Made by a program: the position numbers and the translations under genes | The notes under the pieces: model-generated | Database searches by the model: none | The model's input: the letters and a program-made list of their open reading frames with translations, nothing else | What the model was told of the DNA's origin: nothing | In this document: piece after piece, positions 10,257-43,131 of the stretch | Layout of the letters: each line of letters begins with the position of its first letter | How positions within the stretch are numbered: position 1 is the stretch's first letter | Source of the DNA: Macrostomum lignano | Lineage: Eukaryota | NCBI GenBank assembly: GCA_002269645.1 | Contig: NIVC01000040.1 | Span: 1,116,001 to 1,180,000, forward strand | DNA length: 64,000 bases | Reading direction: 5' to 3'

Positions 10257-10344
10257 CTGAGGGCAGTTTTAAGATGATCGGGGCGTTTTTTATTTGTTTT
10301 GAGGCACAAAACTGGATTTTGAATACTTGGACACGTGCATATAT

Positions 10345-11672: not shown

Positions 11673-12391
11673 TGATTCTGTTGAAAGTAGCCATTATAAG
11701 ACAGTCCCATCGAGTCGGGTCCCAATCCCAGTAGGGATACGAATGCGCTATGATGACTGCGAGGCTCGAATCCAGTCGAGCAGACGCCAGCCATAATATC
11801 GGTGCCATAAACCGGGCTGACAAATTTCAATTCCCAATAGTGCAAGCCGTCTATTAGTGGCCGATTGCCAACCGCCGCCGCGGTGCCTCGGCTAAACAGC
11901 GGATGAAAGCTGACGATGCGGCCGCAGCTGGACAGGGCGCAGTCGGCGGCCTCCGGTTCTGCCCAGGACCAATCGGCGTCGCTGTTATCCTGCCGACTAC
12001 CGCCGTCACCAGTTGTCGATGCCGACAACTCTTCGCCGCAGGCGCAATGAATCCAAGTCAAAGATCTGGCACCGCCGCCGTTGGCTCGGGGACAGTTGCA
12101 GAACGACTCGGTGTCCCTGCGCGGTTTGTACAGTTCAGACAGGCCGCCGCCTTGGGCGCTGATGGCTGCTCGGCGATGCTGTTGAAGATGATGACGGAGT
12201 CTGGGATGGTGCCGAGGCGACTCACCACTGTTGCTGCTTCTGTCATCATCGTCTAGAAGGGTGAGCCTCAGCTGCTCGCCAGCGGCCGACTGCTGAGGCT
12301 GATGATCAGCGCCAGTGTAGCCATCGCTGCTGCTGCTGCTACTGCTGCTGTTACTACTGTCAGCAGTAGTGCTGTTGTCTGGTGCTGTTGC
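11673..12391 (-). CDS. SPSB3: SPSB3-like gene, exon with Ser-rich N-region and SPRY N-terminal half
   Basis: Open frame from acceptor tttcag| (12391) through ESFCNC...CACGEE...VSFHPLFSRGTAA...HYWELKFVSPVYGTDIMAGV...SLLG...SMGLSYNG to donor |gtgagg. No in-frame ATG, so an upstream exon is required. Confidence 0.88.
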
Positions 12392-15592: not shown

Positions 15593-18500
15593 GTCCCACC
15601 TGCAGGAATACCTGTGGCGCCGGCTGTACCCAGACGGGCAACACTTCGGCAACTTCCTGTAGGGTGAGCCACTACTACCCTGCCTGAACACTCTTCGCGG
15701 CTAGTGTATAGTAATTGTACCTGAACAATAAAACGGCCCTTTTCAGGGCCACCAAATAATTTGATAGTCCTATTTTGTGTTGCGACAATCGTTGTGGGAG
15801 CAGAATAATATAGGCGACCCGCCATGCTGAAAAAGGGGTAAAAAATAATATAAGACTCTGAAAATAATTAAACAAACAAAACTGAAGGATAGCCATTAAA
15901 TAATAATAGGCCCCCCTAGTAGGCTAACAATAGGCTTTTTAGAAAGAACCAATTAAAAAGGTGATAGATTAAAAAGGCAATAATTAAAAGAATAGCAATA
16001 ATATTAATTACAAAATCACATGTATTAGATTTGTATTTGTCAAAAATGTATATTTTTTAATTGATTTTACTAAAATGTACAAGTAGTTAAAATGTAGATA
16101 TATTAGGCTTATATTGGTATTCTATCTATACATGTATCATTTATGTATACATTAATGGACCAAGTCAAGGTCTCAAGGACTACTCATGTATCAAAGGAAA
16201 GGAAATCTCATTTCTTAAAAAATTTTACTAGGCAAGTTTTCCAAAAGATATACTAGTAATTAGGCCCTAGTAATTAGAAGAATAAGCATTGGCAAATACT
16301 TGCTTCGTTTATATTTGATAACCAATATGCTAATCAAACATTGTCCATTGCATGAAAATTGATAAATAATAAATAATAAATCAACAAATTAAAGAAACAA
16401 ACACAGTAGCAGTAATAAGATCAAAGTGTACAGATACAGATACACTTTTCAGAAGCGCGGCTACTGGCCTGGGTCGTTCTCAAAGCTAGGTCACAACTTT
16501 TTGTTATTGCAAAAAAAGTTTATACATCGACCAATAATCGTACAAAAAAAATTCTTTCGACAATTTCTGTAAGAAGCTGCTACTAAAACCACAAGAAAAC
16601 TTGAAATTGACAAGAAATCAAGGCTATTTGTTATTCTTTGTTGCGGAAAATAAACGACAAAAATATTAAAGAGAAAATAAAATTTTCTTCTATTTTTATT
16701 TTAAATATGCAGTTAAATTTCTTTTGCAAAAATAAAAGAACAAGAAATTGACAAAGGAAATGTTTTTGAGCACAGCATTTTGTTACTCTGCTCTAAATCC
16801 CAGACATTTAAAATTATCGTGTGCGAAAAAGTGCGAAATTATTATAGCATGCACTCGAAAGGACTTCGATCAGTTTAACTAATCACTGAATTAAGAAGTC
16901 TAAATAAGTCTTGAAAGGTTGAATTAAAAATCAAGTTTTCACTATGTATCTTTTCAAAGTTAAGATGATTCGACAAATAAAGAATGTTCATTTTTATGGT
17001 GAATAGAATTGTTTTCATTTTTACATTAAATATAATAAAATCTAACTAATAATAGAAAAAGTCAGGGAACTATCCTTGAACACCAAAAAGCACATTGTGG
17101 ATTTAATATCGACTGCATGTTCCTTAATAAAGGAATTCGGATACTAGTATATATTTGATTATTTGTAGCATAATTTCTGAAAACTATAACTTGCTTGATT
17201 TTACTTTAAGTACTTACTACATTAATACTTATACCAAAGCTACATGTACTTAAAACAAAAAATTATAGTTACTTATTAGACATTTTACTCCAATTAACTT
17301 AAAATAATTCAAATTTATTTTAATTTATTTATTTTTTGAAACTTTTTGGAAAATAGACAAAATTGAATTATTAAATTACCAAAAACCTACTAGCTTAACT
17401 AAAATAGCAATTAGTCTTTAAGAAAAGATTTCACTTGTTAATTGAGAAAAATGAGGATGTGCGAGGTGTAAAAATGCGAAAGAGCATGCAGGAAACAGAG
17501 ACAAACAAAAATGTAGGTAAAAGACACTGCACATGCACATAATATGATAACCAGACATAATGCGCACACTGAAACACCAGTAGCAATGACGCCCAAGCTT
17601 TTGATGATCACAAGCGAAAAGGCAAAACCCAGCCATCTAATCAAAGAAGTAGACTATAGCACGCATATTGAGTGCATCACGCATTTTTTGCAGAGAAGCT
17701 CGAAAATTAACATTGTATTCTGTGCACAACCACCAACTGCGACAGGGTCTGCCGGGGGATTTGTGGGCACGCGGTCGCGGATACAAATCGGAGGAGTCGC
17801 TGACCATTCTGAAATTACAAGCTAGTACATGTAATTTTGTGTATTAATATATTTAGCCCGCTTTATTTCTATGCTCTCGTCCGCCTCTCGTTAATGCATC
17901 CCCAGACTCATGCAAAAATTAAACTTATGATCGAACTATGCATGGCTTCCGTCCCTCGCTTTGAGTCTCTCACCTCCCCATAGTTCCATCAACCTTACCG
18001 TAGTGGCTTCCTATGCAAAAATCATCCCTCCGCATCTTACACAGGCTACTTCAGGCTGTAGACTGTACTACACTATTAATTAGTTGCGCTAAGGAATCTA
18101 CATGTATTTTGCTCGCAGCGCAGCGCGCTGCTCAAAGAAGTTTAGATCTATCTAGATATTCTAGTAATTTCAGGTTTGTCCATAGACTAGAGCTCATGAG
18201 ATGAGAATTCCATTAACTAGTACATTTAATATGAATGAACTGCGTGTGTGTGAGTGCTGTGCATACATATGTATAATATACGAGTAGTTTATGGGCCAAA
18301 TTATTGTGTGGCACAATTCTTGGCATCACTCAGCAGGCACAAGATGCAGTTAAGCAGCGCACGAAAATTCTACAAAAGAAATTGAGCCTGGTTGAGGTGA
18401 TGCGAGGAGGCAGATCCACACAATCTCAGTGAATACACCAGACTGCACCAGATACGAGTCCAGTCGAATGTGCGCACTGGTCTAAGCAGCACACGCATGT

Positions 18501-25359: not shown

Positions 25360-26555
25360 TTAACTCAATTCAATTATCGCTAAAAATTCAAGAATAAAGT
25401 TTCTGGAATTCACTTTCAAAGGAATGCGCCACGTGGCGCAGCCAAGCGATCCCGGAACCTCAGCATAAAATGGTTCAGCAAATGCCCCAAACAGCCAACC
25501 AAAGTCAGGCCCGACCTGTTCAACATTCACTCTGCAGGCATTCAGCATGCGGCTTCTTCTGTTCGTTTCGGTCTTCATTCTGGCAGCTTCCGGGATCTCC
25601 GGGGCTGAGCTGGGTGAGTTTGAGATGCGTCTCACCTGAGCTGGGTGAGTTTGAGATGCGCCTCACCTGAGCTGGGAGCGTTTGAGATGCGTCTCACCTG
25701 AGCTGGGTGAGTTTGAGATGCGTCTCACCTGAGCTGGGTGAGTTTGAGATGCGTCTCACCTGAGCTGGGTGAGTTTGAGATGCGTCTCACCTGAGCTGGG
25801 AGCGTTTGAGATGCGTCTCACCTGAGCTGGGAGCGTTTGAGATGCGTCTCACCTGAGCTGGGTGAGTTTGAGATGCGCCTCACCTGAGCTGGGAGCGTTT
25901 GAGATGCGTCTCACCTGAGCTGGGTGAGTTTGAGATGCGCCTCACCTGAGCTGGGTGAGTTTGAGATGCGCCTCACCTGAGCTGGGTGAGTTTGAGATGC
26001 GCCTCACCTGAGCTGGGTGAGTTTCAGATGCGCCTCACCTGAGCTGGGTGAGTTTGAGATGCGCCTCACCTGAGCTGGGTGAGTTTCAGATGCGCCTCAT
26101 CTGAGCTGGGTGAGTTTGAGCAAATGAGCAAAGACACAGCATCACAGATGAAAAGTCTCACTTTAACTGTGTTTGTGAAAACTCCTCCTTCAAGAATACG
26201 CATCCGTCTATCAGTGGAATTTCTCAGAAGATTAATTGTCGATGCTACTCGTAAATTTGTGATTTGCGAGACTACTGAAGTTATTTCTGACCTTAGTTCA
26301 TTAGTGCTTTGAACAAACTGTACATAAAGCTTATCACTTTCATTCTTTTGCTTGGCTACTTTTATGCGGAGATCTTCTATGTTTATCTGTAGCTGGTGCC
26401 TTGATCGCTCTAATTGTTTCAGTCTGTTTTTATTCAGTTTGATCTCTGGGATCTCTTCGTCGCTGTTGATATATCGCATGTCAAGGATGGATATTTGAGC
26501 TGATGTAAAGAGCGCTGTTGCCAGGAATGGATTCACCTGCAAAATTAATAGACAT
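25360..26555 (-). pseudogene. Polinton-associated coiled-coil/fiber-like ORF split by a 31-bp array
   Basis: MSINFAGESIPG...(fs)MRYINSDEEIPEIKLNKNRLKQL...ICSNSPSS joins in frame to APEIPEAAR...FLAIIELS* once 496 nt of repeat is removed. Function is a guess. Confidence 0.5.
25605..26120. repeat. 31-bp tandem array (16 units plus 20 bp)
   Basis: Unit ctgagctgggtgagtttgagatgcgtctcac; 516 bp = 16x31 + 20. Confidence 0.95.
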
Positions 26556-26571
26556 CTTTTAATAGCAAATT

Positions 26572-27055
26572 TTAAATTACACTTCTTTTTTCTTTGTTGA
26601 TCATGACAAACTGATAGGGTTGGTTCCAATTTTCGTAGCAGAGGTTAACGAATTCCTCCTGTGAAATCTTTCTGTTTGAGTTTTTTGTTGGATTTATAAA
26701 ATAGGCAGGCGCAATGACCTCATTGTAGAATCTTTTTAGCCTGTCCTGTGGAATGATTGGAAACAGGAGAATCAGATTGCAGTTCCACCGAATTGTTTTG
26801 TTCGGGAGCTCGAACCAGTTCTGAGCAATGTAAATTACATTACAATTGTTATGTCGTCCTCTTGTAATTTTTTCTATCTGCTTCTGTGGGCCTGTAATAC
26901 AATCATCAAAGACGCATGTTAAAGACTCTGAATGTTTTACCTGAACCTGATGAACCAACAACAATGCATCTGAAGTGACTCGGGATTGACTCGTGATGAG
27001 AAAACTTAATCTGATTACGCTTCCAGTGAGGATTGAAGTCGTTTGAAAAGTCCAT
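26572..27055 (-). pseudogene. A32/FtsK-like genome-packaging ATPase (Polinton type), internally deleted
   Basis: ATG at 27055; HFRCIVVGSSGSGKT (Walker A, 26933-26956). In another frame: CVFDD (Walker B), TRGRHNNCNVIYIAQNWFELPNKTIRWNCNLILLF. Confidence 0.85.
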
Positions 27056-27084
27056 TTTTTCTATGATGAAAAAATTTTTTTAGT

Positions 27085-27285
27085 AATAAATGTGTCATGT
27101 GTCATTAGATGTGTCATTAAATGTGTCATTAGAAGATGTGTCATTTTGGGACTTAAATGTGTCATTATGGGACTTAGATGTGTCATTAAATGTGTCATTA
27201 GAAGATGTGTCATTTTGGGACTTAAATGTGTCATTATGGGACTTAGATGTGTCATTTTGGGACTTAGATGTGTCATTTCGGGACT
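27085..27285. repeat. Compound 12/21-bp minisatellite between viral ORFs
   Basis: gatgtgtcatta and aatgtgtcattttgggactta units. Confidence 0.9.
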
Positions 27286-27328
27286 AGTCTTATACTCTTA
27301 CATGTCTTGTACCCTCGGAAAGTACCCT

Positions 27329-27723
27329 TTAGTCCAATTTGAAACCACTTCCTTTTTTAATTCTAGCTCTCATCTTCTCATAGACTGCAGGGTTCACACT
27401 GTCTGGTCTGGATTTGGGGCCAGCGGTGCCAGTGGAGCCAGTGGAGGTTGAATCTCTTGTTTAGGTGTTACAGTATCCTTTATCGTTTTGGCTGCTGTGG
27501 CTACACTGCCAGCCGCTTCGGCAACGTTCTTGATGTTCTCTTTGTTCTCTCCAATGATCTTAAAAATCTTGGCCCCCTGAGCGATCAAATCAGCAAGGCC
27601 ATTCCCAGAGCGTTCTTTTCTTGGATAGTGGCCTGCAGGGAAAAGTCCAGATCCGCGTTTAATGAGATTAAGTTCCTCTTTGTCATAGTATTTGTCAATG
27701 TCTTTTTCGAAAATAAGTGGCAT
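27329..27723 (-). pseudogene. Small Polinton/adintovirus core-like protein with GxG motifs
   Basis: ATG at 27723; LIKRGSGLFP, ERSGNGLADLIAQGAKIFKII (amphipathic). After a frameshift near 27395 it ends VYEKMRARIKKGSGFKLD*. Confidence 0.55.
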
Positions 27724-27739
27724 TTTTACTTGAAATAAA

Positions 27740-28804
27740 TTATTTTTTGTTGAACCGCGAAAGCAGAAGCTCTCTCGCCCTCTTATCGATGTATTTTCTC
27801 TCAAGCATTTTATTGAGGATGTGAACGAACTCTTTTCTATTCTCATCTTTCATTCCGGTCTTTGCTGCACCTAGGAGAACAACTAGCCGCTTGTAGACTT
27901 CAGGCACGCCTTTTCCGGAAGAGCTTGGCGGTGATTCGAATTATTGCTCAGAGGAGGATGTTCCTGGTGAGGGTTGCTGTAGCCTAGGTGTGAATACTCT
28001 GTCATTGATTCGCTTCATTCGTTCTGGGGAGAGCTGCTCTAATTGTCGCCAAGCATCAGGGTGTCTATCTTTGTACTGCGAAACATGAATCGGTTCTGCA
28101 GCGTCAAGTTGATCAAGTACTTGTTCAGCCTGGATTTTTTGTTGCTGTGGAGGCGGAGGTTGTTGTGGTTGTTGCTGCTGTTGTGGTTGCTGTGGTTGCG
28201 GTTGTTGTTGTGGTTGTTGTTGTGGTTGTTGTTGTAGTTGTTTGTGGTGGTTGTGGTTGTTGTGGTTGTTGTCTTATGACCTCTTCTTGATCCGGCAAAC
28301 CAAACCATTTTTTAAAGTATTTGTATTTTTTAAACCTGTTCAAGACAATCCTGTTTTCATGTAAAAATTTTCAAAACACCCTGGTTCTTGAGCATATTTA
28401 TGTCCCTATCAAGAGCAAAGATAACAAGATCTTTGTAATTTTCGAGCTGCTTTTTAGACGTTGTATCTAGATTTTGAAATCTTTTCCTTTGTCACTTCAA
28501 TGTTGTAATCCGCCGGTTCCCCGGTAATATATTTTCGCCAGGCGCTAAATCCAAATATATATTTTCCATCATCCACTACGGGGCCAAAAAAGTTATCCGT
28601 CACTTTCATCTGCACCGGTTTTGCTTCTGGTTGTCCTGGTTCCTGAGCCTGGGGTTGCCCCGGTGAAGATGGGATTTTACCCAATGTGTTTTGCAACTGG
28701 CTCTCTTGAATATCACCAATTGCTTCTTTCACAGTGTCGATGTTTTTCTTCGCTTCTGTGTATCCGGGTTTGTGAAATTCGGTGGCTGCTTGGACGAATT
28801 CCAA
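27740..28804 (-). pseudogene. Polinton PZ-like protein (frameshifted, Q/P-rich linker)
   Basis: C-terminus SGKGVPEVYKRLVVLLGAAKTGMKDENRKEFVHILNKMLERKYIDK resembles the RLxLLxxxxxAG...E...I...L motif recalled for Polinton PZ. Stops and frameshifts present. Confidence 0.55.
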
Positions 28805-28813
28805 CTAATTTGA

Positions 28814-29607
28814 ACTAATCTAGGTCCAGGTCAGACACTGACTTTCACATACAATGATTGCTCGTCATTGGTCAGTGTCCACAGTCTAAGAAGTGGATTC
28901 TACATTACTTTCCAATTCAAGACACAAGGTGGAGATGATGCTGCTCATGCCAATGACGATAAGCACAATGCAAATGTGGCATTGATCAGTAACTTCTGGG
29001 CGTACATGTTCAAAGAGTTTAGCGTGTCGAATGGAAGCACAGAGTTGGAAAGAATAGCAAACTTTGTTGTGGTCTATGATACCCAGCGCTTGATTGAGAA
29101 CCCGCATTTTATCCAGTTGGGAAGTGGAGCTGGCTTTATCCCCAATGAGTGGAAAGTTAGGGGATGTGGATGACCCCGGTTACAAAAAGAGAAAGGAGAG
29201 ATAGAACTATGCTCTTGCTGGTGCGAACAATGCTGCTAAGAATCCGCTGTTTAGGTCTGTAGATATTTTTGTACCTTTGAGGTTTATGAGTGGTTTCTGT
29301 AATAGTTTCAATCGGTTGACAAGCAACTTTAGCTACACATTTAGGTTGACTAGAGATGATCGAGATCGAGGAATTTGGACAGGAGCTGACCATACAATGA
29401 TGGAGGTAAAACTTGCTGGTGTGGAGCTGTATTTTGAAACCAATTAAGCGAAAACACTTTGAGACACCGGATCCAAGTAGACCAGAGAACAAACTGTTTC
29501 CTGCTAAACTATCCCATGATCTCACTGTGATGAGAGTTGTCTTGCAAGTTCATAAAGATGCTGAGATTGAGTTTAAAAAACACATGGTACAGAGAGTTAG
29601 GTTTTGA
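28814..29607 (+). pseudogene. Polinton-type double jelly-roll major capsid protein, N-terminal part
   Basis: NLGPGQTLTFTYND...LISNFWAYMFKEFSVSNGSTELE...(fs)DPGYKKRK...VPLRFMSGFCNSFNRL...FRLTRD matches recalled MCP motifs (NN..FLF..I..ELNG; IPL..FGFC; LTR). Cut by a Helitron at 29608. Confidence 0.75.
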
Positions 29608-32055
29608 CTAGCAATCTACGCCCCCCGTTGGGGAGCCAAAGAAATGCAATACACGTTTTTTTAATAAGCTACATGTATCCTTGAAATCTTAAAAAATCTC
29701 CTGTCAAACCTTGTAAGCCTTGACATGTCAGGAATTCCCCCCACAAGCTTTAACATATTAACTTCCCCCCTTGACATCTCAGCAATGCCCCCAATAAGCC
29801 TTGGAAATCTAAAAACATCTGTCAACCTTCTAACCCTACCCTAGCCTACCCTAACCCTAACCCTAAACCTAACCTAACCCTAAAGCATTGAAATTTCCGT
29901 AATTCTCTCTAAGAGTCATTATAGCACTACTACAGCATTATAGCGATTTCCTGTAAGCCTCGACATCGTAGGGATTCCCAAATGAATCTCTTAACTTCGA
30001 CATGAAGCTTCTTTTATTTTTTACATTACGCTTTTTTTATCAGCGATCCCTCCCCTGAGGAGGCATCAAATAATGTAATAAAAAGTTTTCAATAAACTAC
30101 ATGTAGCTTCTGACTTTAGCCTTGAAATCTCATTTATACCCCCGTGAGCCTTGACATCTCAGCTATTCCCCCCGTAAGCCTTAACATGTCAACGATGGCC
30201 CCCATAAACCTTGAAATCTAAAAATCCCCTGTTAACCTTGAAACCCGATAAAATATAACCCTCAACCCACACCTGACCTAAACCTAACTTTAACCCAACC
30301 TAAAGCCTTGAAATCTCAGCAATTCTTCTCCCCTAAGCCTTGACATTTTAGTGATTCCTTCTTTAAGAATCACAGCACTATAACGATTTCCACCAAGCTT
30401 TGACATCGTAGCGATTCCCAAATAAATCTTTTAACTGCGACATGACTTTCCTTTTATGTATACGTAGTGCTACTTTTATTTTTTACATGACTCTTCTTCT
30501 ATCAGCGCCCCCCCCCGTGGCGAGCCAACAAAGAATGCAATAAAAAATTGAGTAAAGTACATGAACTTTGAAGTAGCTTCTGACTTTTGCTTTGACATCT
30601 CAGAACCCCACCCCCCGTAATCTCAGTTATTTTCTGAGAGCCTTTATGTCTCAGTTTTTCTCCCCAGCACAGCATTATAGCTGCATTTAATTTTTACATG
30701 ACACCCTTCATGTCTGACATGAAGCTTCTTTTATTCTACCATGATGCTTCTTAATTTTTTAAATGACACTTTCATTAGTTTTTAAATGAGGCCTCTATGA
30801 TTTTTTATATGAAGCTTCTATGATTGTTTATATGACGCTTCTATGATTGTTTACATGACGCTTCTATAATTGTTTACATGACCCTTCTCTGATTTTTTAC
30901 ATGACGCTTCTATGATTTTTTAAATGACGCTTCTATGATTTTTATATGACGCTTCTACGATTTTTTACATGACGCTTCTATGATTGTTTACATGACGCTT
31001 CTATGATTGTTTACATGACGCTTCTATGATTTTTTACATGACGCTTCTATGATTTTTATATGACGCTTCTACGATTTTTTACATGACGCTTCTATGATTT
31101 TTTACATGACGCTTCTATGATTTTTTACATGACGCTTCTATGCTTTTTACATGACGCTTCTATGATTTTTTACATGACGCTTCTATGATTGTTTATATGA
31201 CGCTTCTATGATTGTTTACATGACGCTTCTATGATTTTTTAAATGACGCTTCTATGATTGTTTACATGACGCTTCTATGATTGTTTACATGACGCTTCTA
31301 TGATTTTTTACATGACGCTTCAATGATTTTTACATGACGCTTCTATGATTTTTTAAATGACGCTTCTACGATTTTTACATGACGCTTCTATGATTGTTTA
31401 TATGACGCTTCTATGATTTTTTACATGACGCTTCTATGAATGTTTACATGACCCTTCTCTGATTTTTTACATGACGCTTCTTTTATAAAAGTCTTTTAGT
31501 TTTCCTGACGTTGAAAAGCTTTAATTAAAAAAATTATAATTTATGAAAATTCGAACCATCGTCGCTGCATTTAGCAGTTCAGTTTGTTCACCTTTAGGCT
31601 AGCTCTCATCGTTTTGATAACATCAAATTTTGCACTTATATAATTCAACACTTGAAAACTCCAAGCATAGAGTAAATCACACGAAGCAGTTATGACATAA
31701 TCAGTTTCTCAGTCAGTCAGTATCAGTTAACAATATGGTTACGCAATTTAAATCAAGTCTGGTGCTACGCTTCCACACTGCATTTTCAATTCAAGTCGGA
31801 GTTACAATTCAGTTATGATGCAATCTATTTCAGAATCAGAATTCAACCAGTCAGTTTTTTCTCTAGCATTCTTACAATGCATTTCAAGTCGAAAAGTTTG
31901 CTTGACCTTTGCAAAAAAGCATGTTTTTCGAATATTTAATGCCTTTAGCATCGAAAAATTTCTTAGCCACGATGCATGTACAGTCACGGGAAAATTTCTG
32001 ATCGAACAGTGCAAGTCTCATGAAAATCGGTTAAGCCACTTTTTCTCTAATCTAT

Positions 32056-32095
<40 letters not shown>
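29608..32095 (-). mobile_element. Non-autonomous Helitron, subfamily A0
   Basis: Minus-strand 3' end: GC hairpin then agattgCTAG|T. Contains a 23-bp satellite (30790-31480, atgacgcttctatgattttttac) and the shared ~400-bp 5' core. Confidence 0.65.
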
Positions 32096-32096
<1 letters not shown>

Positions 32097-32099
32097 ATC

Positions 32100-34484
32100 T
32101 GGCATGCTGGCTAGCATGTCTATAAAGCATGTCCATAAACATATAGACATGCTGGCTTTTTACTGTTAGACATGGTGGTTCTTCTATGTTTGACATGGTG
32201 GCTCTTTAATGTTCGACATGTTGGCTTTTTACTGTTAGACATGGTGGTTCTTCTATGTTTGACATGGTGGCTCTTTAATGTTCGACATGTTGGCTTTTTA
32301 CTGTTAGACATGGTGGTTCTTCTATGTTTGACATGGTGGCATTTTAATGTTCGACATGGTGGCTCTTTAATGTTAGACATGGTGGCTCTTCTATGTTTGA
32401 CATGGTGGCTCTTCTATTTTTGACATGGTGGCTCTTTAATGATCGACATGGTGGTTCTTTCATGTTCGAAATGGTGGTTCTTTAATGTTCGAAATGGTGG
32501 CTCTTAAATATTCTACATGGTGGCTCTTTTATGTTCGACATTGTGGCTCTTTAAAGTTCGATATGGTGGCTCTTTTATGTTAGACATGGTGGTTCTTTAA
32601 TGTTCGACATAGTGGCTCTTTAATGTTTGAAATATTGGCTCTTTAATGTTCGACATGGTGGCTCTTTTAGGTTTGACATAATGGCTCTTTAATGTTTGAC
32701 ATAGTGGCTCTTTAATGTTCGATATGGTGGCTCTTTTATGTTAGACATGGTGGCTCTTTTAGGTTTGACATGATGGCACTTTTATGTTTTGACATGGCGG
32801 CTCTTTAATGTTGGATATGGTGGCTCTTTAGTGTTTTACATGGTGGCTCTTTAATGTTCGACATTTTGGCTCTTTAATGTTCGACATGGTGGCTCTTTTA
32901 CCAGTATGTTCGAAATGGTGGCTCTTTAATGTTTGACATAAACTCACAGATATGTTTGACATATTGGCTCTTAAATTTTTGACATGGTGGGTCTTTTATG
33001 TTCGGCATGGTGGCTCTTTTTAATATCTGACATGGTGGCTCTTTTATGTTCGACATGGTGGCTCTTTTAGGTTTGACATGGTGGCTCTTAATTGTTTGAC
33101 ATGGTGGCTCTTTAATGTTCGAAATGGTGGCTCTTTAATGTTTGAAATGGTGGCTCTTTAAAATTCTACATGGTGGCTCTTTAATGTTCGACATGGTGGT
33201 TCTTTAATGTTCTTCATTATATAGCTCTTTTATGTTACACATGGTGGCTCTTTAATGTTCGACATGGTGGCTCTTCTATGTTTGACATAAAGTCACATAT
33301 ATGTTCGACATGGTGGTTCTTTAATGTTCTTCATTATATAGCTCTTTAATGTTCGACATGGTGGCTCTTTAATGTTCGACATGGTGGCTCTTCTATGTTT
33401 GACATAAAGTCACATATATGTTTGACATGGTGGCTCTTTAATGTTCGACATGGTGGATCTTTTTTGTTCTACATGGTAACTCTTTTATGTTAGATACAGT
33501 GGCTTTTTAATGTCTGACATGTTGGCTCTTTTATGTTTGACATGGTGGCTCTTTAATGTTCGACATGGTGGCTCTTTAATGTTGGCATAAAGTCACATAT
33601 ATGTTTGACATGGTGGCTCCTAAATGTTCGACATGGTGGCTCTTTAATGTTGGCATAAAGTCACATATATGTTTGACATGGTGGCTCCTAAATGTTTGAC
33701 ATGGTGGCTCTTTATGTTTGACATGGTGGCTCTTTAATGTTCGACATAGTGGCTCTTTAATGTTTGAAATGGTGGCTCTTTAAATGTTTGACATGGTGAG
33801 TCTTTTATGTTCGACATGGTGGCTCTTTTATGTTTGACATGGTAACTCTTTTATGTTCGATATGTTGGCTCTTCTATGTTTGACATTGCGCTTCTTTGAT
33901 GTTTAGCAATTTTATTGTGTTTTTAAGGTGTTTTAATAAAAAAATCTTTTTGCACTACTAGGATTTGAACCCAGGTCGCTACATTAGCATTCCAGTCTGT
34001 TCGCATCAGGGCTATCTCTTTTCAATTGGAGAACATGAATTGTGGCCCTTATAATTCAATTTTTACAGCAAGTCAATTGGAGTAAAAAGTTATGACATAA
34101 TCAATTTCTCAGTCAGCCAGTATCAGTCTCAATTCAAGTTAGCAATATGGTTACGCAATTTAGATCAAGTCGTGTGTGCATTTTTCGGCACTGTTTTCAA
34201 CTTGTTGTGATGCAATCTTTATCACAATCGGAATTCAGTCAGTCAGTTTTTTCTCTAGCATTCTTACAATGCATTTCAAGTCGAAAATTTGGCTTGACCT
34301 TTGCAAAAAAGCATGTTTTTCGAATATTTAATCCCTTTAACATTGAGCAATTTCTTAGCCAAGATGCATCTACCGTCCCAGGAAAATTTCTGATCGAATG
34401 GTGCAAGTTTGAAGAAAATCGGTTGAGCCAATTTTTCTGAAATCTATCGCATAGCTACAGACATTTCATTTTTAGTATATTGGA
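32100..34484 (-). mobile_element. Helitron subfamily A unit, 3' end missing
   Basis: 5' end TCCAATATACTAAAAATG at 34484, ~400-bp core, tRNA-like cassette, 23-bp satellite gacatggtggctctttaatgttc. Confidence 0.7.
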
Positions 34485-37400
34485 CTAGCAATCTTCGCCC
34501 CCCGATGGGGGACATCTAGATAGAATCTCTGTTCTCTACAAGTATCAAAAGGATGGCCAAACAAAGCCTTCACATAGTCAATAGAAAAACTGCTCAGATG
34601 AAGTGCAATGCAAAAAGAAAACATCCTAAGACAGCAAGCATCCCCCCAGATAGCAAGCACCCCCAGATAGCAAGCACCCCCAGATAGCAGGCATCCCCAG
34701 TTAGCAAGCACCCCCCAGATGGCAAGCACCCCCAGATAGCAGGCACCCCCAGATAGCAGGCACCCCCAGATAGCAAGCATCCCCCAGATAGCAAGCACCC
34801 GAGATAGCAAGCACCCCCAGATAGCAGGCACCCCCAGATAGCAGGCACCCCCAGATAGCAAGCACCCCAGATAGCAAGCACCCCCAGATAGCAAGCACCC
34901 CAGATAGCAAGCACCCCAGATAGCAAGCACCCCCAGATAGCAGGCACCCCAGATAGCAGGCACCCCCAGATAGCAAGCACCCCAGATAGCAAGCACCCCC
35001 AGATAGCAAGCACCCCAGATAGCAAGCACCCCAGATAGCAAGCAGCCCCAGATAGCAGGCACCCCCAGATAGCAGGCACCCCCAGATAGCAAGCACCCCA
35101 GATAGCAAGCACCCCCAGATAGCAAGCACCCCAGATAGCAAGCACCCCCAGATAGCAAGCAGCCCCAGATAGCAGACACCCCCAGATAGCAAGCACCCCC
35201 AGATAGCAAGCACCCCCAGATAGCAAGCACCCCCAGATAGCAAGCACCCCAGATAGCAAGCAACCAATTGATAGCAAGTATTGATCTTTAAATAGCAAGC
35301 ATCCACCGGACAATAAGTAGCAAGTGCAACAATTTCCTTAGCTTTATAATGGCTCCTTTGTGATTGGCATGACGCTTCTTTTTACGTTTAAAATTGCGTC
35401 TCCTATGTTCGACATGGCGCCTTTTTACTGTTAGACAGGTGGCTCTTCTATTTTTGACATGGTGGCTCTTTAATGTTCGACATGGTGGATCTTTAATGTT
35501 TGACATGGTGGCTCTTTAATGTTTGACATAGTGGCTCTTTAATGTTCTACATGGTGGCCCTTTATTGTTCGACATGGTGGATCTTCTATGTTTGACATGG
35601 TGGCTCTTCTATTTTTGACATGGTGGCTCTTTAATGTTCGACATGGTGGCACTTTAATGTTCTACATGGTGGCTCTTTAATGTTTGACATAAAGTCACAT
35701 ATATGTTTGACATGGTGGCTCTTTAATGTTCGACATGGTGGCTCTTTTTAATATCTGACATGGTGGCTCTTCTATGTTTGGCATGGTGGCTCTTAAATGT
35801 TTAACCTGGTGGCTCTTTTATGTTTGACACAGTGGCTCTTTAATGTTCGACAAAGTGGATATTTAATGTTTGACAAGGTGGCTTTTAAATGTTTGACATG
35901 GTGGCTCCTTAATGATCGAAATGGTGGCTCTTTAATGTTTGACATAAAGACACATAAATAATTGACATGGTGGCTCTTAAATTTTTGACATGGTGGCTCT
36001 TTAATGTTTTACATGGTGGCTCTTTAATGTTTGACATGGTGGCTCTTTAATGTTTGACATAAATTCACTTGTATGTTCGAAATGGTGGCCCTTTAATATT
36101 TTACATTGTGACTCTTAAGTGTTCGACATGGTGGCTCTTTTAGGTTTGACATGATGGCTCTTTTAGGTTTTACATGGTGGCTCTTTTAGGTTTAACATGG
36201 TGGCTCTTAAATGTTTGACATAAAGTCACTTATATGGTTGACATGGTGGCTCTTTTATATTCTACATTTTGGCTCTTAAATTTTCGACATGGTGGCTCTT
36301 TTAGGTTTGACATGGTGGCTCTTTTATGCTTGATATGGTGGCTCTTTAATGTTTAACATAGTGACTTTTAATGTTTGACATGGTGGCTCTTTAATGTTCG
36401 ACATGGTGGCTCTTTAATATTCGACATGGTGGCTCTTTAATGTTCGACATGGTGGCTCTTTAATGTTTGAAATGGTGGCTCTTTAATGTTTTACATGGTG
36501 GCTCTTTTATGTTCGACATGGTGGCTCTTTAATATTCTTCATGTTTTAGCTCCTTCATGTTTGACATGGTGGCTCTTTAATGTTCGAAATGGTCTTTAAT
36601 GTTTGACATAAAGTCACATATATGTTGGACATGGTGGCTCTTAAATGTTTGACATGGTGGCTCTTTATGTTTGACATGTTGGCTCTTTTATGTTTGACAT
36701 GTTGGCTCTTTTATGTTTGACATGGTGGCTCTTTAATGTTCGAAATGGTGGCTCTTTTTTGTTCTACATGGTAACTCTTTTATATTTGATACGGTGGCTT
36801 TTTAATGTCTGACATGTTGGCTCTTTTATGTTTGACATGGTGGCTCTTTAATGTTCGAAAAAAGTGGCTCCTAAATGTTTGACATAGTGGCTCTTTGATG
36901 TTAGAAATAGTGGCTGTTCTATGGTCAACATGGTGGCTCTTTAATGTTCGAAATGGTGGCTCTTTGATGTTCCAAATGGTGCCTCTTGAATATTAGACAT
37001 GGTGGCTCGTTTAGGTTTGACATGGTGGCTCTTTTATGTTTGACATGGTAACTCTTTTATGTTCGACATGTTTAGCAGTTTTGTGTTTTAAAGGTGTTTT
37101 AATAAAAAAAATCTTTTTTGCACTACTAAGATTCGAACCCAGGTCGCTACATTAGCATTCCAGTCTGTTCGCATCAGGGCTATCTTTTTTCAATTGGAGA
37201 ACATGAATTGTGGCCCTTATAATTCAATTCTTACAGCAAGTCAATTGGAGTAAAAAGTTATGACATAATCAATTTCTCAGTCAGCCAGAATCAGTCTCAA
37301 TTTAAGTTGGCAATATGGTTACGCAATTTCATTCAAGTCGTGTGTGCATTGCTTTGACACTGTTTTCAACTTGTTGTGATGCAATCTTTAGCACATTCGG

Positions 37401-37654
37401 AATTCAGTCAGTCAGTTTTTTCTCTAGCATTCTTACAATGCATTTCAAGTCGAAAATTTTGCTTGACCTTTGCAAAAAAGCATGTTTTTCGAATATTTTA
37501 TCCCTTTAACATTGAGCAATTTCTTAGCCAGGATGCATGTACCGTGCCAGGAAAATTTCTGATCGAATGGTGCAAGTTTGAAGAAAATCGGTTGAGCCAT
37601 TTTTTTCTGAAATCTATCGCATACCGACAGACAACTCATTTTTAGTATATAGGA
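34485..37654 (-). mobile_element. Complete 3.17-kb Helitron subfamily A unit
   Basis: 5' TCCTATATACTAAAAATGAG; core; tRNA-like cassette; 23-bp satellite; 17-18-bp satellite cagatagcaagcaccccc; C/G-run hairpin then agattgCTAG 3' end abutting the next TC. Confidence 0.8.
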
Positions 37655-40600
37655 CTAGCAATCTTCGCCCCCCGATTGGGGACATCTGGATAGAATCCTT
37701 GTTCTTTACAAATAACAAATAGACAGCGAAATAAAGCCTTCATAAAAAAACAACAGACATTCCCTCTAAAAACAAAACATCACAAGACAGCATTCAAGCA
37801 TCGATCCCCAAATAGTGAAATCCTCCAGACTGCAAGCATCCCCCCGATAGCAAGCAACCCCAGATAGCAAGCATCCCCCAGATAGCAAGCATCCCCCAGA
37901 CCTCAGATAGTAAGCATCCCCCAGACTGCAAGCAACCCCAGATAGCAAGCATCACCCAGACCGCAAGCAACCCCAGATAGCAAGCATTAACCTGGATACA
38001 AAGAGACCTTATAGATATCTAGCAACCCCCTCTTAGATAGCAAGTACCCTCCACCCCCCAAGAGCAAGCATCTCCCAATAGCAAGTTACCCCAGTAGCAA
38101 GCATCCTTCCGATAGCAAGTATCCATCCTTAAATAGCAAGCATCCACCAGAGAAAGTAGCTAGTGCAACAATTTCCTTAGATTTATAGTGGCTCCATTTT
38201 GTTTGGCATGACACTTCTTTTATGTTTGAAACGGTGTCTCTTTTATGCTTAAAAAGGTGGCTCTTTAATGTTGACATAGTGGCTCTTCTATGTTTACCAT
38301 GGCGGCCCTTTTACGTTTGAAATGTTGTCTCTGTTATGTTTGACATGGTGGCTCTTCTATGTTTCACATGGGTCTCTTCTTTGTTTGACATGGTGGCTTA
38401 GTTGTTTGACATGGTGGCTCTTTTATGTTTGACATGCAGTCACATATATGTTTGACATGATGGCGCTTTAATGTTTGACATGGAGTCACGTATATGTTTG
38501 GCATGGTGGCTCTTTTATGTTTAACATGGTGGCTCTTTAATGTTCGACATGGTGGCTCTTTAATGTTTGACATTGAGTCACGTAAATGTTTGACATGATG
38601 GCTCTTTTATATTTTACATGGTGGCTCTTTATGTTTGACATGGTGTCTCTTCTATGTTTCACATGGTGGCTCTTTAATGTTCGCCATGGTGGCTATTTTA
38701 TGTTTGACATGGTGGCTCTTCTATGTTTGACATGCAGTCACATATATGTTTGACATGATGGCGCTTTAATGTTTGACATGGAGTCACGTATATGTTTAAA
38801 ATGGTGGCTCTTTTATGTTCGACATGGTGGCTCTCTAATGTTCGACATGGAGGCTCCTTAAGTTTTGACATTAAGTCACGTATATGTGGCTGTTTTATGT
38901 TTGACATGATGGCTTTTGTATATTTGACGTGGTGGCTGTTTAATGTTTGACATGGTGGCTCTTTAATGTTTGTCATGGTGGCTCTTTAATGTTTGACATG
39001 GTGGCTCTTAAATGTTCGACATGGTGGCTCTTTTATGTTTGACATGGTGTCTCTTTTATGTTTGACATGTAGTCACGTATATGTTTGACATGGTGGCTCT
39101 TTTATGTTTGACATGGTGGCTATTTAATATTCGACATACAAAAAAACCTATAAAAAGAAAACCGACAAACTGCTCAAATGAAGTGCAATGCAAAAAGAAA
39201 TCATCCCAAGACAGCAAGCATCACCCAGAGAGAAAGCATCCCCCAGATAGCAAGTACCCCCCCCCCCAGATAGCAAGCATCACCCAGATAGCAAGCACCC
39301 CCAGATAGCAAGCATCCCCCAGATAACAAGCACCCCCCAGATAGCAAGCATCCCCAAGATAGCAAGCATCCCCAGATAGCAAGCATCCCCCAGATAGCAA
39401 GTACCCCCCCCCCAGATAGCAAGCATCCCCCAGATAGCAAGCATCCCCTCGATAGCAAGCATTCCCCAGATAGCAAGCATCCCCCAGATAGCAAGCACCC
39501 CCAGATAGCAAGCACCCCCCAGATAGCAAGCATCCCCAGATAGCAAGCATCCCCCAGAAAGCAAGCACCCCCAGATAGCAAGCATCCCCCAGATAGCAAG
39601 CATCCACCATACAATAAGTAGCTAGTGCGAAAATTTCCTTAGCTTTATAGTGGCTCCTTTAAAATTGGCATGATTTAAAATTGGCATTGGCTGGCAATAC
39701 TTTTACGTTTGAAATTGTGTATATTTTATGCTTGACATGGTGGCTCTATTATGTTAACATGGTGCCTCTTTTATGTTTAACATAGTGGCTCATTTATGTT
39801 TGACATGGTGGCTCTTTATTGTTTGACATGGTGGCTCTTTAATGTTCGAAATGGTGGTTCTTTAATGTTCGAAATGGTTGTTCTTTAATGTTTGACATAA
39901 AAACACCTATATGTTTGACATAAAGTCACATTTACGTTGGACATAGTGGCTCTTTAATGTTTGACATGGTGGCTCTTTAATGTTTGACATGGTGGCTCTT
40001 TAATATTCTACATGGTGGCTCTTTAATGTTCGACATGGTGGCTTTTTAATGTTCGACATGGTGGCTCTTTTATGTTTGACATGGTGGCTCTTTAATGTTC
40101 GAAATAGTTGGTTCTTTAGTGTTTGACACGGTGGCTTTTTAATGTTCGACATAGTGGCTCTTTAATATTCTACATTGTGGCTCTTCTATGTTCGAAATGG
40201 TGATTCTTTAATTTTATTCACGGTGGCTCTTTAATATTCGAAATGGTGGCTCTTTTATGTTCGACATGGTGGCTCTTTAATGTTCGACATAGTGGCTCTT
40301 TTATGTTTGCCATGGTGGCTCTTTAATGTTCTTCACGGTGGCTCTTTTACGTTTGACATGGTGGCACTTTAATGTTCGACGTGGTGGCTCTTTAATGTTC
40401 GAAATGGTGACTCTTTTATGTTTTACATGGTGGCTCTTTAATTTTTGACATAAAGTCACGTATATGTTTTACATGGTGCCCATGTAATGTTTGACATGGT
40501 GCCTCTTTTATGTTTGACATTGTGCTTTTTTATGTTTAGCAGTTTCGTGTTTTCAAGGTGTTTTAATAAAAAAATTATTTTGCACTACTAAGATTCGAAC

Positions 40601-41088
40601 CCAGGTCGCTACGTTGGCAGTCCAGTCTGTTCGTATCTAGGCTATCTCTTTTCAATTGGTGTACATGAATTGTGGCCCTTATAATTCAATTCTTACAGCA
40701 AGTCAATTAAAGTAAAAAGTTATGACATAATCAATTTCTCAGTCAGCCAGTATCAGTCTCAGTTCAAGTTAGCAATATTGGTTACGCAATTTAAATCAAG
40801 TCGTGTGTGCATTTCTTCGACACTGTTTTCAACTTGTTGTGATGCAATCTTTATCAGAATTGAAATTCAGTCAGTCAGTTTTTTCTCTAGCATCCTTACA
40901 ATGCATTTCAGGTCGAAAGAGCTGCTTGACCTTTGCAAAAAAGCATGTTTTTCGAATATTTAATCCCTTTAACATTGAGCAATTTCTTAGCCAAGATGCA
41001 TCTACCGTCCCAGGAAAATTTCTGATCGAATGGTGCAAGTTTGAAGAAAATCGGTTGAGCCAATTTTTCTAAAATCTATCGCATACCG
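37655..41088 (-). mobile_element. Composite Helitron subfamily A unit, 5' tip missing
   Basis: Hairpin-CTAG end at 37655; two blocks of each satellite; the core ends at gcataccg and runs into the next satellite. Confidence 0.7.
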
Positions 41089-42716
41089 CATTCTTAATGG
41101 TGTCTGTTTTATGTTTGACATGGTGGCTCTTTAATTTTTAACATGGTAACTCTTTTATGTTCGATATGGTGGCTCTTTTATGTTCGAAATGGTGGCCCTT
41201 TAATGTTCGACATGGTGGCTCTTTTATGTTCGAAATGGTGGCTCTTTAATGTTCGACATGGTGGCTCCTTTAGGTTTGAAATGGTGGCTCTTTAATGTTT
41301 GACATTGTGGCTCTTTAATATTTGACAAGGTGGCTCTTTAATGTTCGACATGGTGGCTCCTTAATTTTCGAAATGGTGGCTCCTTAATTTTCGAAATGGT
41401 GGCTCCTTAATTTTCGAAATGGTGGCTGTTTTATGTTTGACATGGTGGCTCTTTAATGTTTGACATGGTGGCTCTTTAATGTTCGACATGGTGGCTCTTT
41501 AATGTTTGACATGGTGGCTCTTTAATGTTTGACATGGTGGCTCTTTAATGTTCGACATGGTGGCTCTTTTATGTTCGACATGGTGGCTCTTTTATGTTCT
41601 ACATGGCTGCTCTTTTATGTTCGACATGGTGGCTCTTTAATGTTTGACATGGTGGCTCTTTTAGATTTGAAATGGTGGGTCTTTAATGCTTGACAATGTG
41701 GCTCTTTAATGTTTGACATGGTAACTCTTTTATGTTTGATATGGTGGCTCTTTTATGTTCGACATGGTGGCTCTTTAATGTTCTACATGGTAACTCTTTT
41801 ATGTTTGATACGGTGGCTTTTTAATGTCTGACCACGGACTACTTAAGTAGAAGGACGCGACACGCGCAAAACGTGCAAATTTTATTGGAGGCTGAATATT
41901 CAATTTTATGTAGCTCGACTCCAGAAACTCGCCGAAGTGTAGTTTTTTCACATGATACAAATAATTTAGTCCTTGTTCATGTAACATACGTAATGCATGA
42001 TTAAAACGATGCAGAAACCTTAGAAATTAGTTTCAAGCGACGAAAACTAACTTTTTCTGGTGAGTTTCGAGTCTCGACGTGCGGCATTTGTAGCACAAAA
42101 TATAGCTCTTCATTTTGATATAGCACTTATTTTAAGTGATTCTTTTAGCTGTTCATTGTTACTGTGAAGCGGACCTTTTTGACCTGGTCATAAGAAAACC
42201 TATCGCAAGATGTACAGACATATAACAGATACCACTGATTCTGCGCCAATCGTATCGGATAAATAGAGTCAAGACGAACTAAGACGAAAGATTTTAAGAA
42301 CACGAATTTTGAGTCTTAGTAGCCATTCAATATTTTTATGCCATATTAATATTATTGGCCTTTTTAAAATGTATGCAAAAAGTATATATCAAAGTGGTAT
42401 AAGATAGCTAGCAGGTTTCTTGTAGAAAGCAAATGCGAAAACATGCAGTTTAAACAGTATCCAACAAAAGCGTACAACGAAATATTTTACAACAAAATGA
42501 TCTATTGTATCAAGACAACTTGCTATAACATTGCATCAAAAAAACTAACAGTACGCAGTTCTGGCAAGGCACCACTCATAGTGATCTTCATCATGCAAAG
42601 CCAGCTGAATGAAATGCATGTAGTCAATAAGAATAACAAATAGAAATGAGGATAAAGTGCACAATCTTGCACCTGGACACGAGTTGGTGGCAAATGATCA
42701 GGTGTAGTAGGTAAAT

Positions 42717-42872
42717 ATAGACTAAAGTCTTGGACAAACTATAGAGGTCCATGATCATCTGGACAGTAGCTATACAAAAGAACTGAACTCCATGCTGCAG
42801 GAGAAGCATTACAATAGCCACCTGGCTGATGAAGTTAAAAGCTTTGCAGAAATCTATACAGACAATTGACAC
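42717..42872 (-). pseudogene. LINE reverse-transcriptase fragment
   Basis: IVCIDFCKAFNFISQ...LLQHGV...IMDLY resembles the FIDFxKAFDSV...L..YG...I..LY RT motif. Confidence 0.55.
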
Positions 42873-43035
42873 CTCCTTTTAGAGAGTCTCGCAGGTGCCA
42901 TATGGACTAGCTACTTGTTGTAACAGCAGTACAGTGACAGTTGTAACAGCTCAGCCTTGGACACTTCATTGTCACAACAGTTCTGGAGCATCCTCCTTAA
43001 GATGTGTGTACACTTGTTTGTGAGGAAGCCAACCA

Positions 43036-43131
43036 CTCGAGTATTTGTTCCATGTATACAAAATAGCAACCTCCATGGCCTTGCCTATAGATAGAGAATT
43101 CTTTCTCCAGACCATCCAATTGAAAGTCACC
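43036..43131 (-). pseudogene. P-element/THAP9-like transposase fragment
   Basis: FQLDGLEKEFSIYRQGHGGCYFVYMEQILE resembles the catalytic-Glu motif (F)QxDxLE..F..YRQ..GG; preceded by an acceptor ttttcag. Confidence 0.6.

What the first reader, a model, noticed from the sequence alone, without database searches (positions are those of the whole stretch)
25360..29607. Endogenous Polinton/adintovirus-like virion module hidden by frameshifts
Seen: five packed intronless ORFs that the ORF track shows only as fragments, including Walker A GSSGSGKT, VFDD, RGRH and IYIAQ, plus jelly-roll-like segments. Established: an A32-like ATPase with a double jelly-roll MCP and PZ is the Polinton/adintovirus morphogenesis set. 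Inferred: a divergent, possibly undescribed invertebrate lineage, since the proteins keep only the core motifs. No polymerase, integrase, protease or TIR survives here.
Basis: partly seen in the sequence, partly recalled or inferred. Interest (0 to 1): 0.8.

Follow-up and report, generated by a model that had tools for sequence, protein, structure and literature searches.

The report
Decayed endogenous Polinton/adintovirus capsid-gene fragment
A 3-kb stretch of this animal genome is the broken remnant of the particle-building genes (packaging ATPase, major capsid protein and two companion proteins) of a Polinton/adintovirus-type DNA virus that once integrated there; such viral fossils are common in animal genomes, so this is an ordinary though correctly spotted find.

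Summary
Window 26.57-29.60 kb carries four recognisable virus-derived genes plus a short remnant of a fifth, and all are broken. The + strand gene is 70-82% identical to metagenomic proteins. Their intact 423-aa form matches Pfam DJR-like_dom and folds (pLDDT 87.5) into a double jelly-roll. Foldseek matches that model to Sputnik, PBCV-1, mavirus, PRD1, adintovirus and adomavirus capsid proteins (E down to 1e-18). The ATPase pieces are 47% identical (E 1e-28) to a Pox_A32-family ATPase that sits beside the same capsid gene in relatives. Those relatives' contigs carry the full adintovirus/Polinton set: ATPase, penton-position gene, pX-like gene, MCP, clan-CE protease, fibre, PLA2, rve integrase and protein-primed PolB. 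The window copy has seven frameshifts, two in-frame stops, one large internal deletion and several truncations. Profile searches find no polymerase, integrase, protease, pX or PLA2 anywhere in the window, and no inverted repeats in the 10 kb around it. It lies among host minisatellites. It is a dead endogenous fragment and a new member of a known kind. The "undescribed lineage keeping only core motifs" and "PZ" parts are not supported. Interest is low.

The parts
25605..26120 (.). 31-bp minisatellite (16.6 copies). It is the left neighbour and boundary, not part of the element's genes.
   Evidence: Tandem Repeats Finder.
26069..26644 (-). Unassigned 192-codon coiled-coil reading frame. It overlaps the 3' end of the ATPase gene and runs into the minisatellite. 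It may be an element gene cut off by the repeat, but this is not shown.
   Evidence: ORF. No Pfam, PHROG or relative match. hhalign probability against the p426 family is 0.3%.
26572..27055 (-). Broken A32-like (FtsK/HerA-type) genome-packaging ATPase gene. It has 1 frameshift and 1 internal deletion of about 99 codons. Both Walker motifs and the RGRH...IYIAQ block are kept.
   Evidence: Motifs. Pfam Pox_A32 E 0.0045 on the Walker A piece. BLASTP to the L006 ATPase gives E 1e-12 and 1e-6. 47% identity to the L013 ATPase, E 1e-28. Profile hits E 1e-25 and 1e-12. Break counts.
27087..27285 (.). Minisatellite (periods 12/21/69) lying between the ATPase and the next gene.
27332..27723 (-). Broken homologue of a conserved roughly 130-aa virion-module protein (family starts 'MPIIF..D.DKY'). 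Full length is covered, with 1 frameshift. Its function is unknown.
   Evidence: 61-62% identity to the L001 130-aa protein over residues 1-130, E 6e-40. The family is conserved next to the MCP in L005, L006, L007 and L012.
27746..28801 (-). Broken homologue of a conserved 290-426-aa coiled-coil protein ('p426' family), which follows the ATPase in L006 and L013. It has 3 frameshifts and 1 in-frame stop, and lacks its first 56 codons. A (GTT)n microsatellite has expanded inside it.
   Evidence: 46-48% identity to the L001 protein, residues 57-420, E 4e-34. Profile hits E 5e-19 to 8e-6. Family membership. Microsatellite.
28814..29441 (+). Broken double jelly-roll major capsid protein gene. Only residues 39-244 of 423 are present, roughly the first jelly roll. 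It has 2 frameshifts and 1 in-frame stop, and is truncated at both the 5' and 3' ends.
   Evidence: E 1e-53 to P0001. 71% identity to P0004. P0004 and relatives pass Pfam PF21738 DJR-like_dom. AlphaFold2 model of P0004 has pLDDT 87.5. Foldseek matches DJR capsid proteins at E 4e-18 and below.
29485..29601 (+). Remnant of about 40 codons of the gene that follows the MCP in the closest relative (L004). That gene occupies the penton (minor capsid) position in relatives.
   Evidence: It is the only hit of a two-sequence profile of the 261-aa family in a six-frame search of the whole window, E 2e-4. BLASTP to the L005 192-aa protein gives E 9e-5. The L004 gene after the MCP belongs to the same family.

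Best explanation
This is a dead, truncated germline insertion of an adintovirus/Polinton (Maverick)-type double-stranded DNA virus. Only part of the virion (morphogenesis) module survives.

In the living ancestor, the double jelly-roll protein would have formed the trimeric capsomers of an icosahedral shell, and the neighbouring penton-position gene the vertices. The A32-like ATPase would have pumped the linear genome into the shell. The two conserved companion proteins (the 130-aa and 290-426-aa families) would have been further virion or assembly components. These roles are inferred from homology and are not shown here.

In this window none of this can work. Every recognisable gene is interrupted or truncated, and the replication and integration genes and the element ends are gone. 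The remnant sits between host minisatellites and decays as neutral DNA.
For: **Homology of each surviving gene**
- MCP.
- ATPase.
- 130-aa and p426 families.

**Gene neighbourhood**
- The same genes lie together in relatives' contigs. Those contigs also carry an Adeno_PX-like gene, PLA2, collagen-repeat fibre, rve integrase and DNA_pol_B_2 (E 6e-30).
- A protease family in those contigs matches ASFV S273R (E 6.5e-4) and weakly adenain.
- The divergent p426/MCP arrangement, followed by the penton-position gene, matches L001 and L004.

**Decay**
- 7 frameshifts, 2 in-frame stops, 1 internal deletion of about 99 codons, and truncated gene ends.
- Minisatellite and microsatellite growth inside the fragment.
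- No profile hits for PolB, integrase, protease, pX, PLA2, TM protein or fibre anywhere in the 64 kb.
- No inverted repeats and no second copy in the window.

**Host context**
- The window has eukaryotic host features: a split sulfotransferase gene, a WSC-domain ORF and a histone 3' stem-loop.

**Literature**
- Degraded adintovirus sequences are endogenised in many animal germlines (PMC8502044).
Against: - The host species is unknown, so 'germline' rests on the flanking repeats and host-like genes in a single assembly.
- The ATPase and the unassigned ORF are separated from the capsid block by a minisatellite, and their order differs from L001, L006 and L013. The remnant may therefore be rearranged, or made of two fragments.
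- The penton remnant is weak (E 2e-4), and the fold of that family was not tested.
- PolB and integrase profiles were built from one or two relatives only, so very decayed traces could be missed.
Confidence: 0.9

Rival explanations
1. The remnant is a mosaic. The ATPase plus coiled-coil ORF (26.07-27.06 kb) and the capsid block (27.33-29.60 kb) come from two different element copies or from a rearrangement, not from one collinear insertion.
For: Gene order differs from every relative. In L006 and L013 the ATPase is followed by the p426-family gene. In L001 the 130-aa gene is followed by a convergent pX-like gene that the window lacks. A minisatellite sits at the junction.
Against: The ATPase-to-L013 identity (47%) equals the MCP-to-L013/L012 identity (46.5%). 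This is as expected if both window genes belong to one lineage. All pieces are packed within 3 kb, and no second copy lies in the window. No complete genome of the closest sublineage (L001/L004) is available to define its native order.
Confidence: 0.2
2. The fragment derives from a protist-type Polinton-like virus or virophage rather than from an animal adintovirus/Polinton.
For: The best single structural matches of the MCP model are virophage capsid proteins: Sputnik at E 4e-18 and Qinghai Lake virophage at E 2e-18. Most relatives come from metagenomes of unknown host.
Against: Relatives encode rve integrase with protein-primed PolB (PF03175), an Adeno_PX-like gene and a parvovirus-type PLA2. 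PMC8502044 describes these accessory genes as typical of animal adintoviruses. Adintovirus, MELD-virus and adomavirus proteins lie in the same Foldseek E-value range. A scan of IMG/VR found no relative.
Confidence: 0.05
3. The sequence is an exogenous virus or contaminant joined to host DNA by misassembly, or the frameshifts are sequencing errors in an intact element.
For: Close relatives with intact reading frames exist in other datasets.
Against: Damage is not limited to single-base shifts. There is an internal deletion of about 99 codons, 5' and 3' gene ends are missing, and repeat expansions have occurred inside the fragment. No other element genes are present. Host-type minisatellites flank it on both sides and also occur inside it.
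Confidence: 0.03
4. One or more pieces have been co-opted by the host, for example the intact coiled-coil ORF or a capsid fragment, and are expressed as a host gene.
For: The 192-codon frame at 26069-26644 is uninterrupted.
Against: That frame has no detectable relatives and ends inside a minisatellite. All recognisable viral genes are broken.
Confidence: 0.02

Closest known systems
Adintoviruses (proposed Adintoviridae; Starrett et al. 2021, PMC8502044) and their endogenised, degraded copies in animal genomes
   Same: Relatives of the window genes carry a DJR capsid gene, A32/FtsK-type ATPase, clan-CE protease, rve integrase, PF03175-type protein-primed PolB, a pX-like gene and a parvovirus-type PLA2. 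An 'Adintovirus sp.' protein and a 'MELD virus sp.' protein are among the top structural matches. Degraded germline copies are described as widespread.
   Different: In relatives the pX-like gene and the PLA2 gene are separate, whereas the paper describes a fused PLA2X. No formal placement in the Alpha or Beta classes was made. The window copy keeps only part of the virion module.
Polintons/Mavericks ('polintoviruses'; Krupovic, Bamford and Koonin 2014, PMC4028283)
   Same: [quoted passage not shown] It matches the gene content and order of L005, L006, L012 and L013.
   Different: The window lacks pPolB, integrase, protease and terminal inverted repeats. It is a fragment, not an element. Sequence-level comparison with the published PY/PX proteins was not run (see referred steps).
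Virophage and Nucleocytoviricota DJR capsid proteins (Sputnik 3j26, mavirus 6g44, PBCV-1 Vp54, SGIV MCP) and PRD1 P3
   Same: The model shares the double jelly-roll fold: Foldseek E 4e-18 to 2e-13, TM 0.42-0.63.
   Different: Sequence identity is only 8-11%. These viruses have different genome plans, so the match shows fold-level kinship only.
Adenovirus virion components (pX/mu core protein, adenain)
   Same: Relatives carry a gene that passes Pfam Adeno_PX (27-28 bits against a cutoff of 25). They also carry a protease family with a weak adenain match.
   Different: Neither gene survives in the window. The capsid protein is much smaller than hexon.

Membership tests
Polinton/Maverick-adintovirus lineage | Double jelly-roll major capsid protein (PY/hexon-like) | tested here: met
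   The window gene 28814-29441 is 71% identical to P0004. P0004 and relatives pass PF21738. The AlphaFold2 model has pLDDT 87.5. DJR capsid matches reach E 4e-18. The window keeps only about the first jelly roll.
Polinton/Maverick-adintovirus lineage | A32-like / FtsK-HerA genome-packaging ATPase | tested here: met
   Walker A, Walker B and the RGRH..Q block are present. The window gene is 47% identical to the L013 ATPase, E 1e-28. The L006 and L013 ATPases pass Pfam Pox_A32 at 44.8 and 32.7 bits against a cutoff of 22.8. On its own the window gene reaches only E 0.0045, below the cutoff.
Polinton/Maverick-adintovirus lineage | Single jelly-roll penton (PX) encoded near the MCP | tested here: inconclusive
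   A remnant of about 40 codons matches the 261-aa family at E 2e-4, in the syntenic position after the MCP.
Polinton/Maverick-adintovirus lineage | Adenain-like (clan CE) cysteine protease | tested here: not met
   Absent from the window: the profile of relatives' proteases finds nothing. It is present in relatives L005, L006, L010 and L012. Their profile hits ASFV S273R at E 6.5e-4 and adenain at E 0.43. The lineage therefore has it and this copy has lost it.
Polinton/Maverick-adintovirus lineage | Protein-primed family B DNA polymerase | tested here: not met
   Absent from the window (the profile came from a single relative, so sensitivity is limited). Present in relative L012: PF03175 E 6e-30.
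Polinton/Maverick-adintovirus lineage | Retrovirus-like (rve) integrase | tested here: not met
   Absent from the window. Present in relatives L005 (36.1 bits) and L012 (43.1 bits), cutoff 32.6.
Polinton/Maverick-adintovirus lineage | Terminal inverted repeats and 6-bp target-site duplication | tested here: not met
   No inverted repeat of 25 bases or more lies in 23-33 kb. Both ends of the fragment abut minisatellites, so the original termini are lost and a target-site duplication cannot be looked for.
Adintovirus virion accessory set (PMC8502044) | pX-like domain and parvovirus-type PLA2 | tested here: not met
   Absent from the window. Present in relatives as separate genes: Adeno_PX at 27.3-28.5 bits and Phospholip_A2_4 at 45.6 bits.
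Endogenous viral element (degraded germline copy) | Viral genes disrupted and embedded in host sequence | tested here: met
   There are 7 frameshifts, 2 stops, 1 internal deletion and truncated gene ends. Host minisatellites flank the fragment and occur inside it. Host-type genes lie elsewhere in the window. Germline status as such cannot be tested with these tools.

The most novel reading that the evidence does not exclude
The fragment and its close relatives form a distinct, still unnamed adintovirus sublineage. The closest are 72-82% identical MCPs with intact frames in several metagenomes and sequencing runs. Its features would be a divergently transcribed p426/MCP gene pair and separate pX and PLA2 genes. 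It may still circulate in, or have recently entered, the host group of this genome. The capsid family is small: only 41 representatives at E <= 0.001 among 1.84 billion.
Probability: 0.25. Interest if true: 0.35.

Novelty: new member of a known kind. Interest (0 to 1): 0.2.

Why it matters
This adds one more dated-by-decay record of adintovirus/Polinton invasion of an animal germline. It also links a rarely sampled capsid family to the standard adintovirus gene plan. That family has 41 representatives among 1.84 billion proteins and was not found in a close-relative scan of IMG/VR. The link is useful for annotating the same family in other assemblies and for masking it as repeat-derived sequence. 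It opens no new biological question, because the copy is inert and the phenomenon is well described.

Tried and rejected
- **Direct family scans of the window pieces.** Pfam, PHROGs and PDB sequences gave only a sub-threshold Pox_A32 hit on the Walker A piece.
- **Word-index homology search with the ATPase piece.** It found nothing.
- **First AlphaFold2 run.** It used a shallow five-row alignment and failed, with pLDDT 32. It was replaced by a 33-row alignment headed by a natural intact relative.
- **Profile of the capsid family against PDB sequences.** No hit. Only the fold comparison worked.
- **Public contig scans.** The IMG/VR scan with P0004 found no relatives. The alignment A2 was too diverse for pattern scanning. 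The JGI metagenome scan returned one 1-kb contig.
- **Coiled-coil ORF 26069-26644.** No match to Pfam, PHROGs, any ORF of 16 related loci, or the p426 profile. It is left unassigned.
- **p426 family against PDB.** Nothing meaningful.
- **Host identification.** Rfam gave only a histone stem-loop. Cluster look-ups gave no names or accessions. A literature search for the sample identifiers found nothing relevant.
- **Chance ORFs, a cellular ATPase and a retroelement** were considered and rejected on the homology evidence above. The Gag-like ORF at 54.6 kb is separate and unrelated.
Full report
**What is in the sequence**

The window is eukaryotic, about 42% G+C and crowded with 17-31-bp minisatellites. 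It also holds a split sulfotransferase gene, a WSC-domain ORF and a histone 3' stem-loop.

Between 26.07 and 29.60 kb the mechanical ORF lists show many short, tightly packed reading-frame pieces on both strands.

**The + strand gene is a double jelly-roll capsid gene**

- The longest + strand piece found three database proteins at E 1e-53 to 6e-15 and 75-83% identity.
- An exhaustive HMMER search with a profile of these and the window pieces, each piece as its own row, found 41 proteins among 1.84 billion representatives. They include full-length forms of 423-622 aa.
- Seven of ten full-length members pass Pfam PF21738 'double jelly roll-like domain'.
- A shallow first structure prediction failed (pLDDT 32).
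- A second prediction took the natural intact relative P0004 (423 aa) with a 33-row alignment and gave pLDDT 87.5 and pTM 0.88.
- Foldseek matched that model to Sputnik (E 4e-18), PBCV-1 Vp54, SGIV, mavirus and PRD1 P3 capsid proteins. In BFVD it matched virophage, 'Adintovirus sp.', adomavirus LO7 and 'MELD virus sp.' proteins.
- The window copy aligns to residues 39-244 of P0004 at 71% identity. That is roughly the first jelly roll only.

**The ATPase is A32-like and belongs with the capsid gene**

- On its own the window ATPase reaches only a sub-threshold Pox_A32 hit (E 0.0045). It had no word-index relatives.
- Contigs that encode relatives of the capsid protein carry an ATPase nearby: L006, L007, L010 and L013.
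- The L006 and L013 ATPases pass Pfam Pox_A32 at 44.8 and 32.7 bits against a cutoff of 22.8.
- The window pieces align to them: E 1e-12 and 1e-6 to L006, and 47% identity at E 1e-28 to L013.
- The window-to-L013 identity is the same for ATPase (47%) and MCP (46.5%). This fits one lineage for both window genes.

**The other genes**

- Contig L001 holds an intact, syntenic version of the middle of the fragment. It has a 426-aa coiled-coil protein and a 130-aa protein on one strand, with the capsid gene diverging from the first.
- The window carries both. The 130-aa gene is at 27332-27723, with 62% identity and full length. The 426-aa gene is at 27746-28801, with 46% identity over residues 57-420.
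- Both families recur beside the MCP in more distant relatives. In L006 and L013 the larger one directly follows the ATPase.
- In L004, the closest intact relative, the gene after the MCP belongs to a 261-aa family that sits in the penton position in L005, L006 and L012.
- A profile of that family finds a single hit in a six-frame search of the whole window. The hit lies directly after the capsid remnant on the same strand (29485-29601, E 2e-4). This is a plausible but weak penton-gene remnant, and the family's fold was not tested.
- The uninterrupted 192-codon coiled-coil frame at 26069-26644 overlaps the ATPase 3' end and runs into the minisatellite. It matches nothing and stays unassigned.

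**What kind of element**

Contigs L012 and L013 together show this order: ATPase, p426-family gene, 261-aa gene, Adeno_PX-like gene, 130-aa gene, MCP, protease-like gene, collagen-repeat fibre, a transmembrane protein, a parvovirus-type PLA2, rve integrase, and a PF03175 protein-primed PolB (E 6e-30). L005 has the same core with an rve integrase.

The protease family matches the ASFV clan-CE protease S273R (E 6.5e-4) and weakly adenain.

This is the gene plan published for Polintons/Mavericks (PMC4028283) and for adintoviruses, including the pX-like and PLA2 accessory genes (PMC8502044). The same paper states that degraded adintovirus sequences are endogenised in many animal germlines.

**State of the window copy**

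A frameshift-aware protein-to-DNA alignment against natural relatives gave the counts below.

| Gene | Frameshifts | In-frame stops | Deletions and truncations |
|---|---|---|---|
| ATPase | 1 | 0 | 1 internal deletion of about 99 codons |
| 130-aa gene | 1 | 0 | none |
| p426 gene | 3 | 1 | first 56 codons lost |
| MCP | 2 | 1 | first 38 and last ~179 codons lost |
| penton-position gene | not counted | not counted | all but ~40 codons lost |

- The totals are seven frameshifts, two in-frame stops and one large internal deletion, plus truncated gene ends.
- A minisatellite (27087-27285) and a (GTT)n run inside the p426 gene have grown within the fragment.
- Profiles built from relatives' protease, integrase, PolB, pX, PLA2, transmembrane and fibre genes find nothing in the 64 kb.
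- There are no inverted repeats of 25 bases or more in 23-33 kb.
- No second copy lies in the window.
- CpG observed/expected is 0.59 in the fragment against 0.69 window-wide. This is compatible with long residence but not decisive.

**Interpretation**

The best explanation is a dead, truncated endogenous fragment of the virion module of an adintovirus/Polinton-type virus (confidence 0.9). The ancestral roles of the genes (capsid shell, vertex, genome packaging, further virion components) are inferred from homology only.

- The gene order around the ATPase differs from all relatives, so a rearrangement or a two-fragment mosaic remains possible (0.2, not exclusive with the main reading).
- Origin from a protist Polinton-like virus or virophage is unlikely, given the accessory genes of the relatives.
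- Assembly artefact and host co-option are both unlikely.

The identification is right and both of its refutation tests were passed. Three points were not borne out:
- 'Keep only the core motifs': identities to public relatives are 46-82%.
- 'Possibly undescribed invertebrate lineage': neither the host group nor formal placement could be established.
- 'PZ': no such protein was identified. The published set is ATPase, PY, PX and protease.

**Novelty and interest**

This is a new member of a known kind. The capsid family is rare in public data: 41 representatives, 19 clusters in the word-index search, no close relative in the IMG/VR scan, and one small JGI contig. A modest chance therefore remains that it marks a distinct adintovirus sublineage with intact relatives still present in some datasets. 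Interest is 0.2.

Noticed in passing
window 3336-3893 and 6329-6784 (minus strand): Two large exons of a sulfotransferase-like host gene (Pfam Sulfotransfer_2, 22.1 bits on the upstream exon). They are separated by 21-23-bp minisatellites lying in the intron.
   Followed up: partly
window 15730-15776 (+): A histone 3' UTR stem-loop (Rfam RF00032, 36.3 bits). No recognisable histone reading frame appears upstream in the ORF list, so it may belong to a decayed or unusual histone gene.
   Followed up: partly
window 29830-29884: A short interstitial telomere-like (CCCTAA)n run lies just right of the viral fragment. Further minisatellites follow at 30118-33886.
   Followed up: no
window 54608-55618 (minus strand): A 336-aa ORF with a weak CCHC zinc-knuckle hit, likely a Gag-like remnant of a retroelement. 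It is unrelated to the finding.
   Followed up: no
window 51295-51708 (+): An ORF with a clear WSC domain (Pfam PF01822, E 3e-16), presumably an exon of a host gene.
   Followed up: no
window 32146-44556 (several arrays): One 23-bp satellite family (consensus contains GACATGGTGGCTCTTTAATGTTC) recurs in at least seven arrays over 12 kb. It is interleaved with 17-18-bp arrays. Minisatellites occupy a large share of the window.
   Followed up: no
L016 (ENA ERZ25039524 contig_35272, 73.7 kb; locus coordinates about 3000-12000): A distant relative of the capsid gene (P0029, 192 aa) lies among many short ORFs on a long contig. It looks like another degraded endogenous copy in a different genome.
   Followed up: no
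L012/L013 (ENA ERZ21818093/4), also L014/L015 (Logan ERR12380052, ERR13065126): Near-identical contigs from several datasets carry uninterrupted reading frames for the whole virion module plus PLA2, integrase and PolB. This suggests that a related element is intact, or recently active, in some sampled organism.
   Followed up: partly
L001 317-733 (+), L005 674-1111 (+), L012 1652-2032 (+): The pX-like gene is a small stand-alone gene in these relatives, separate from the PLA2 gene. The adintovirus paper describes a fused PLA2X instead.
   Followed up: partly
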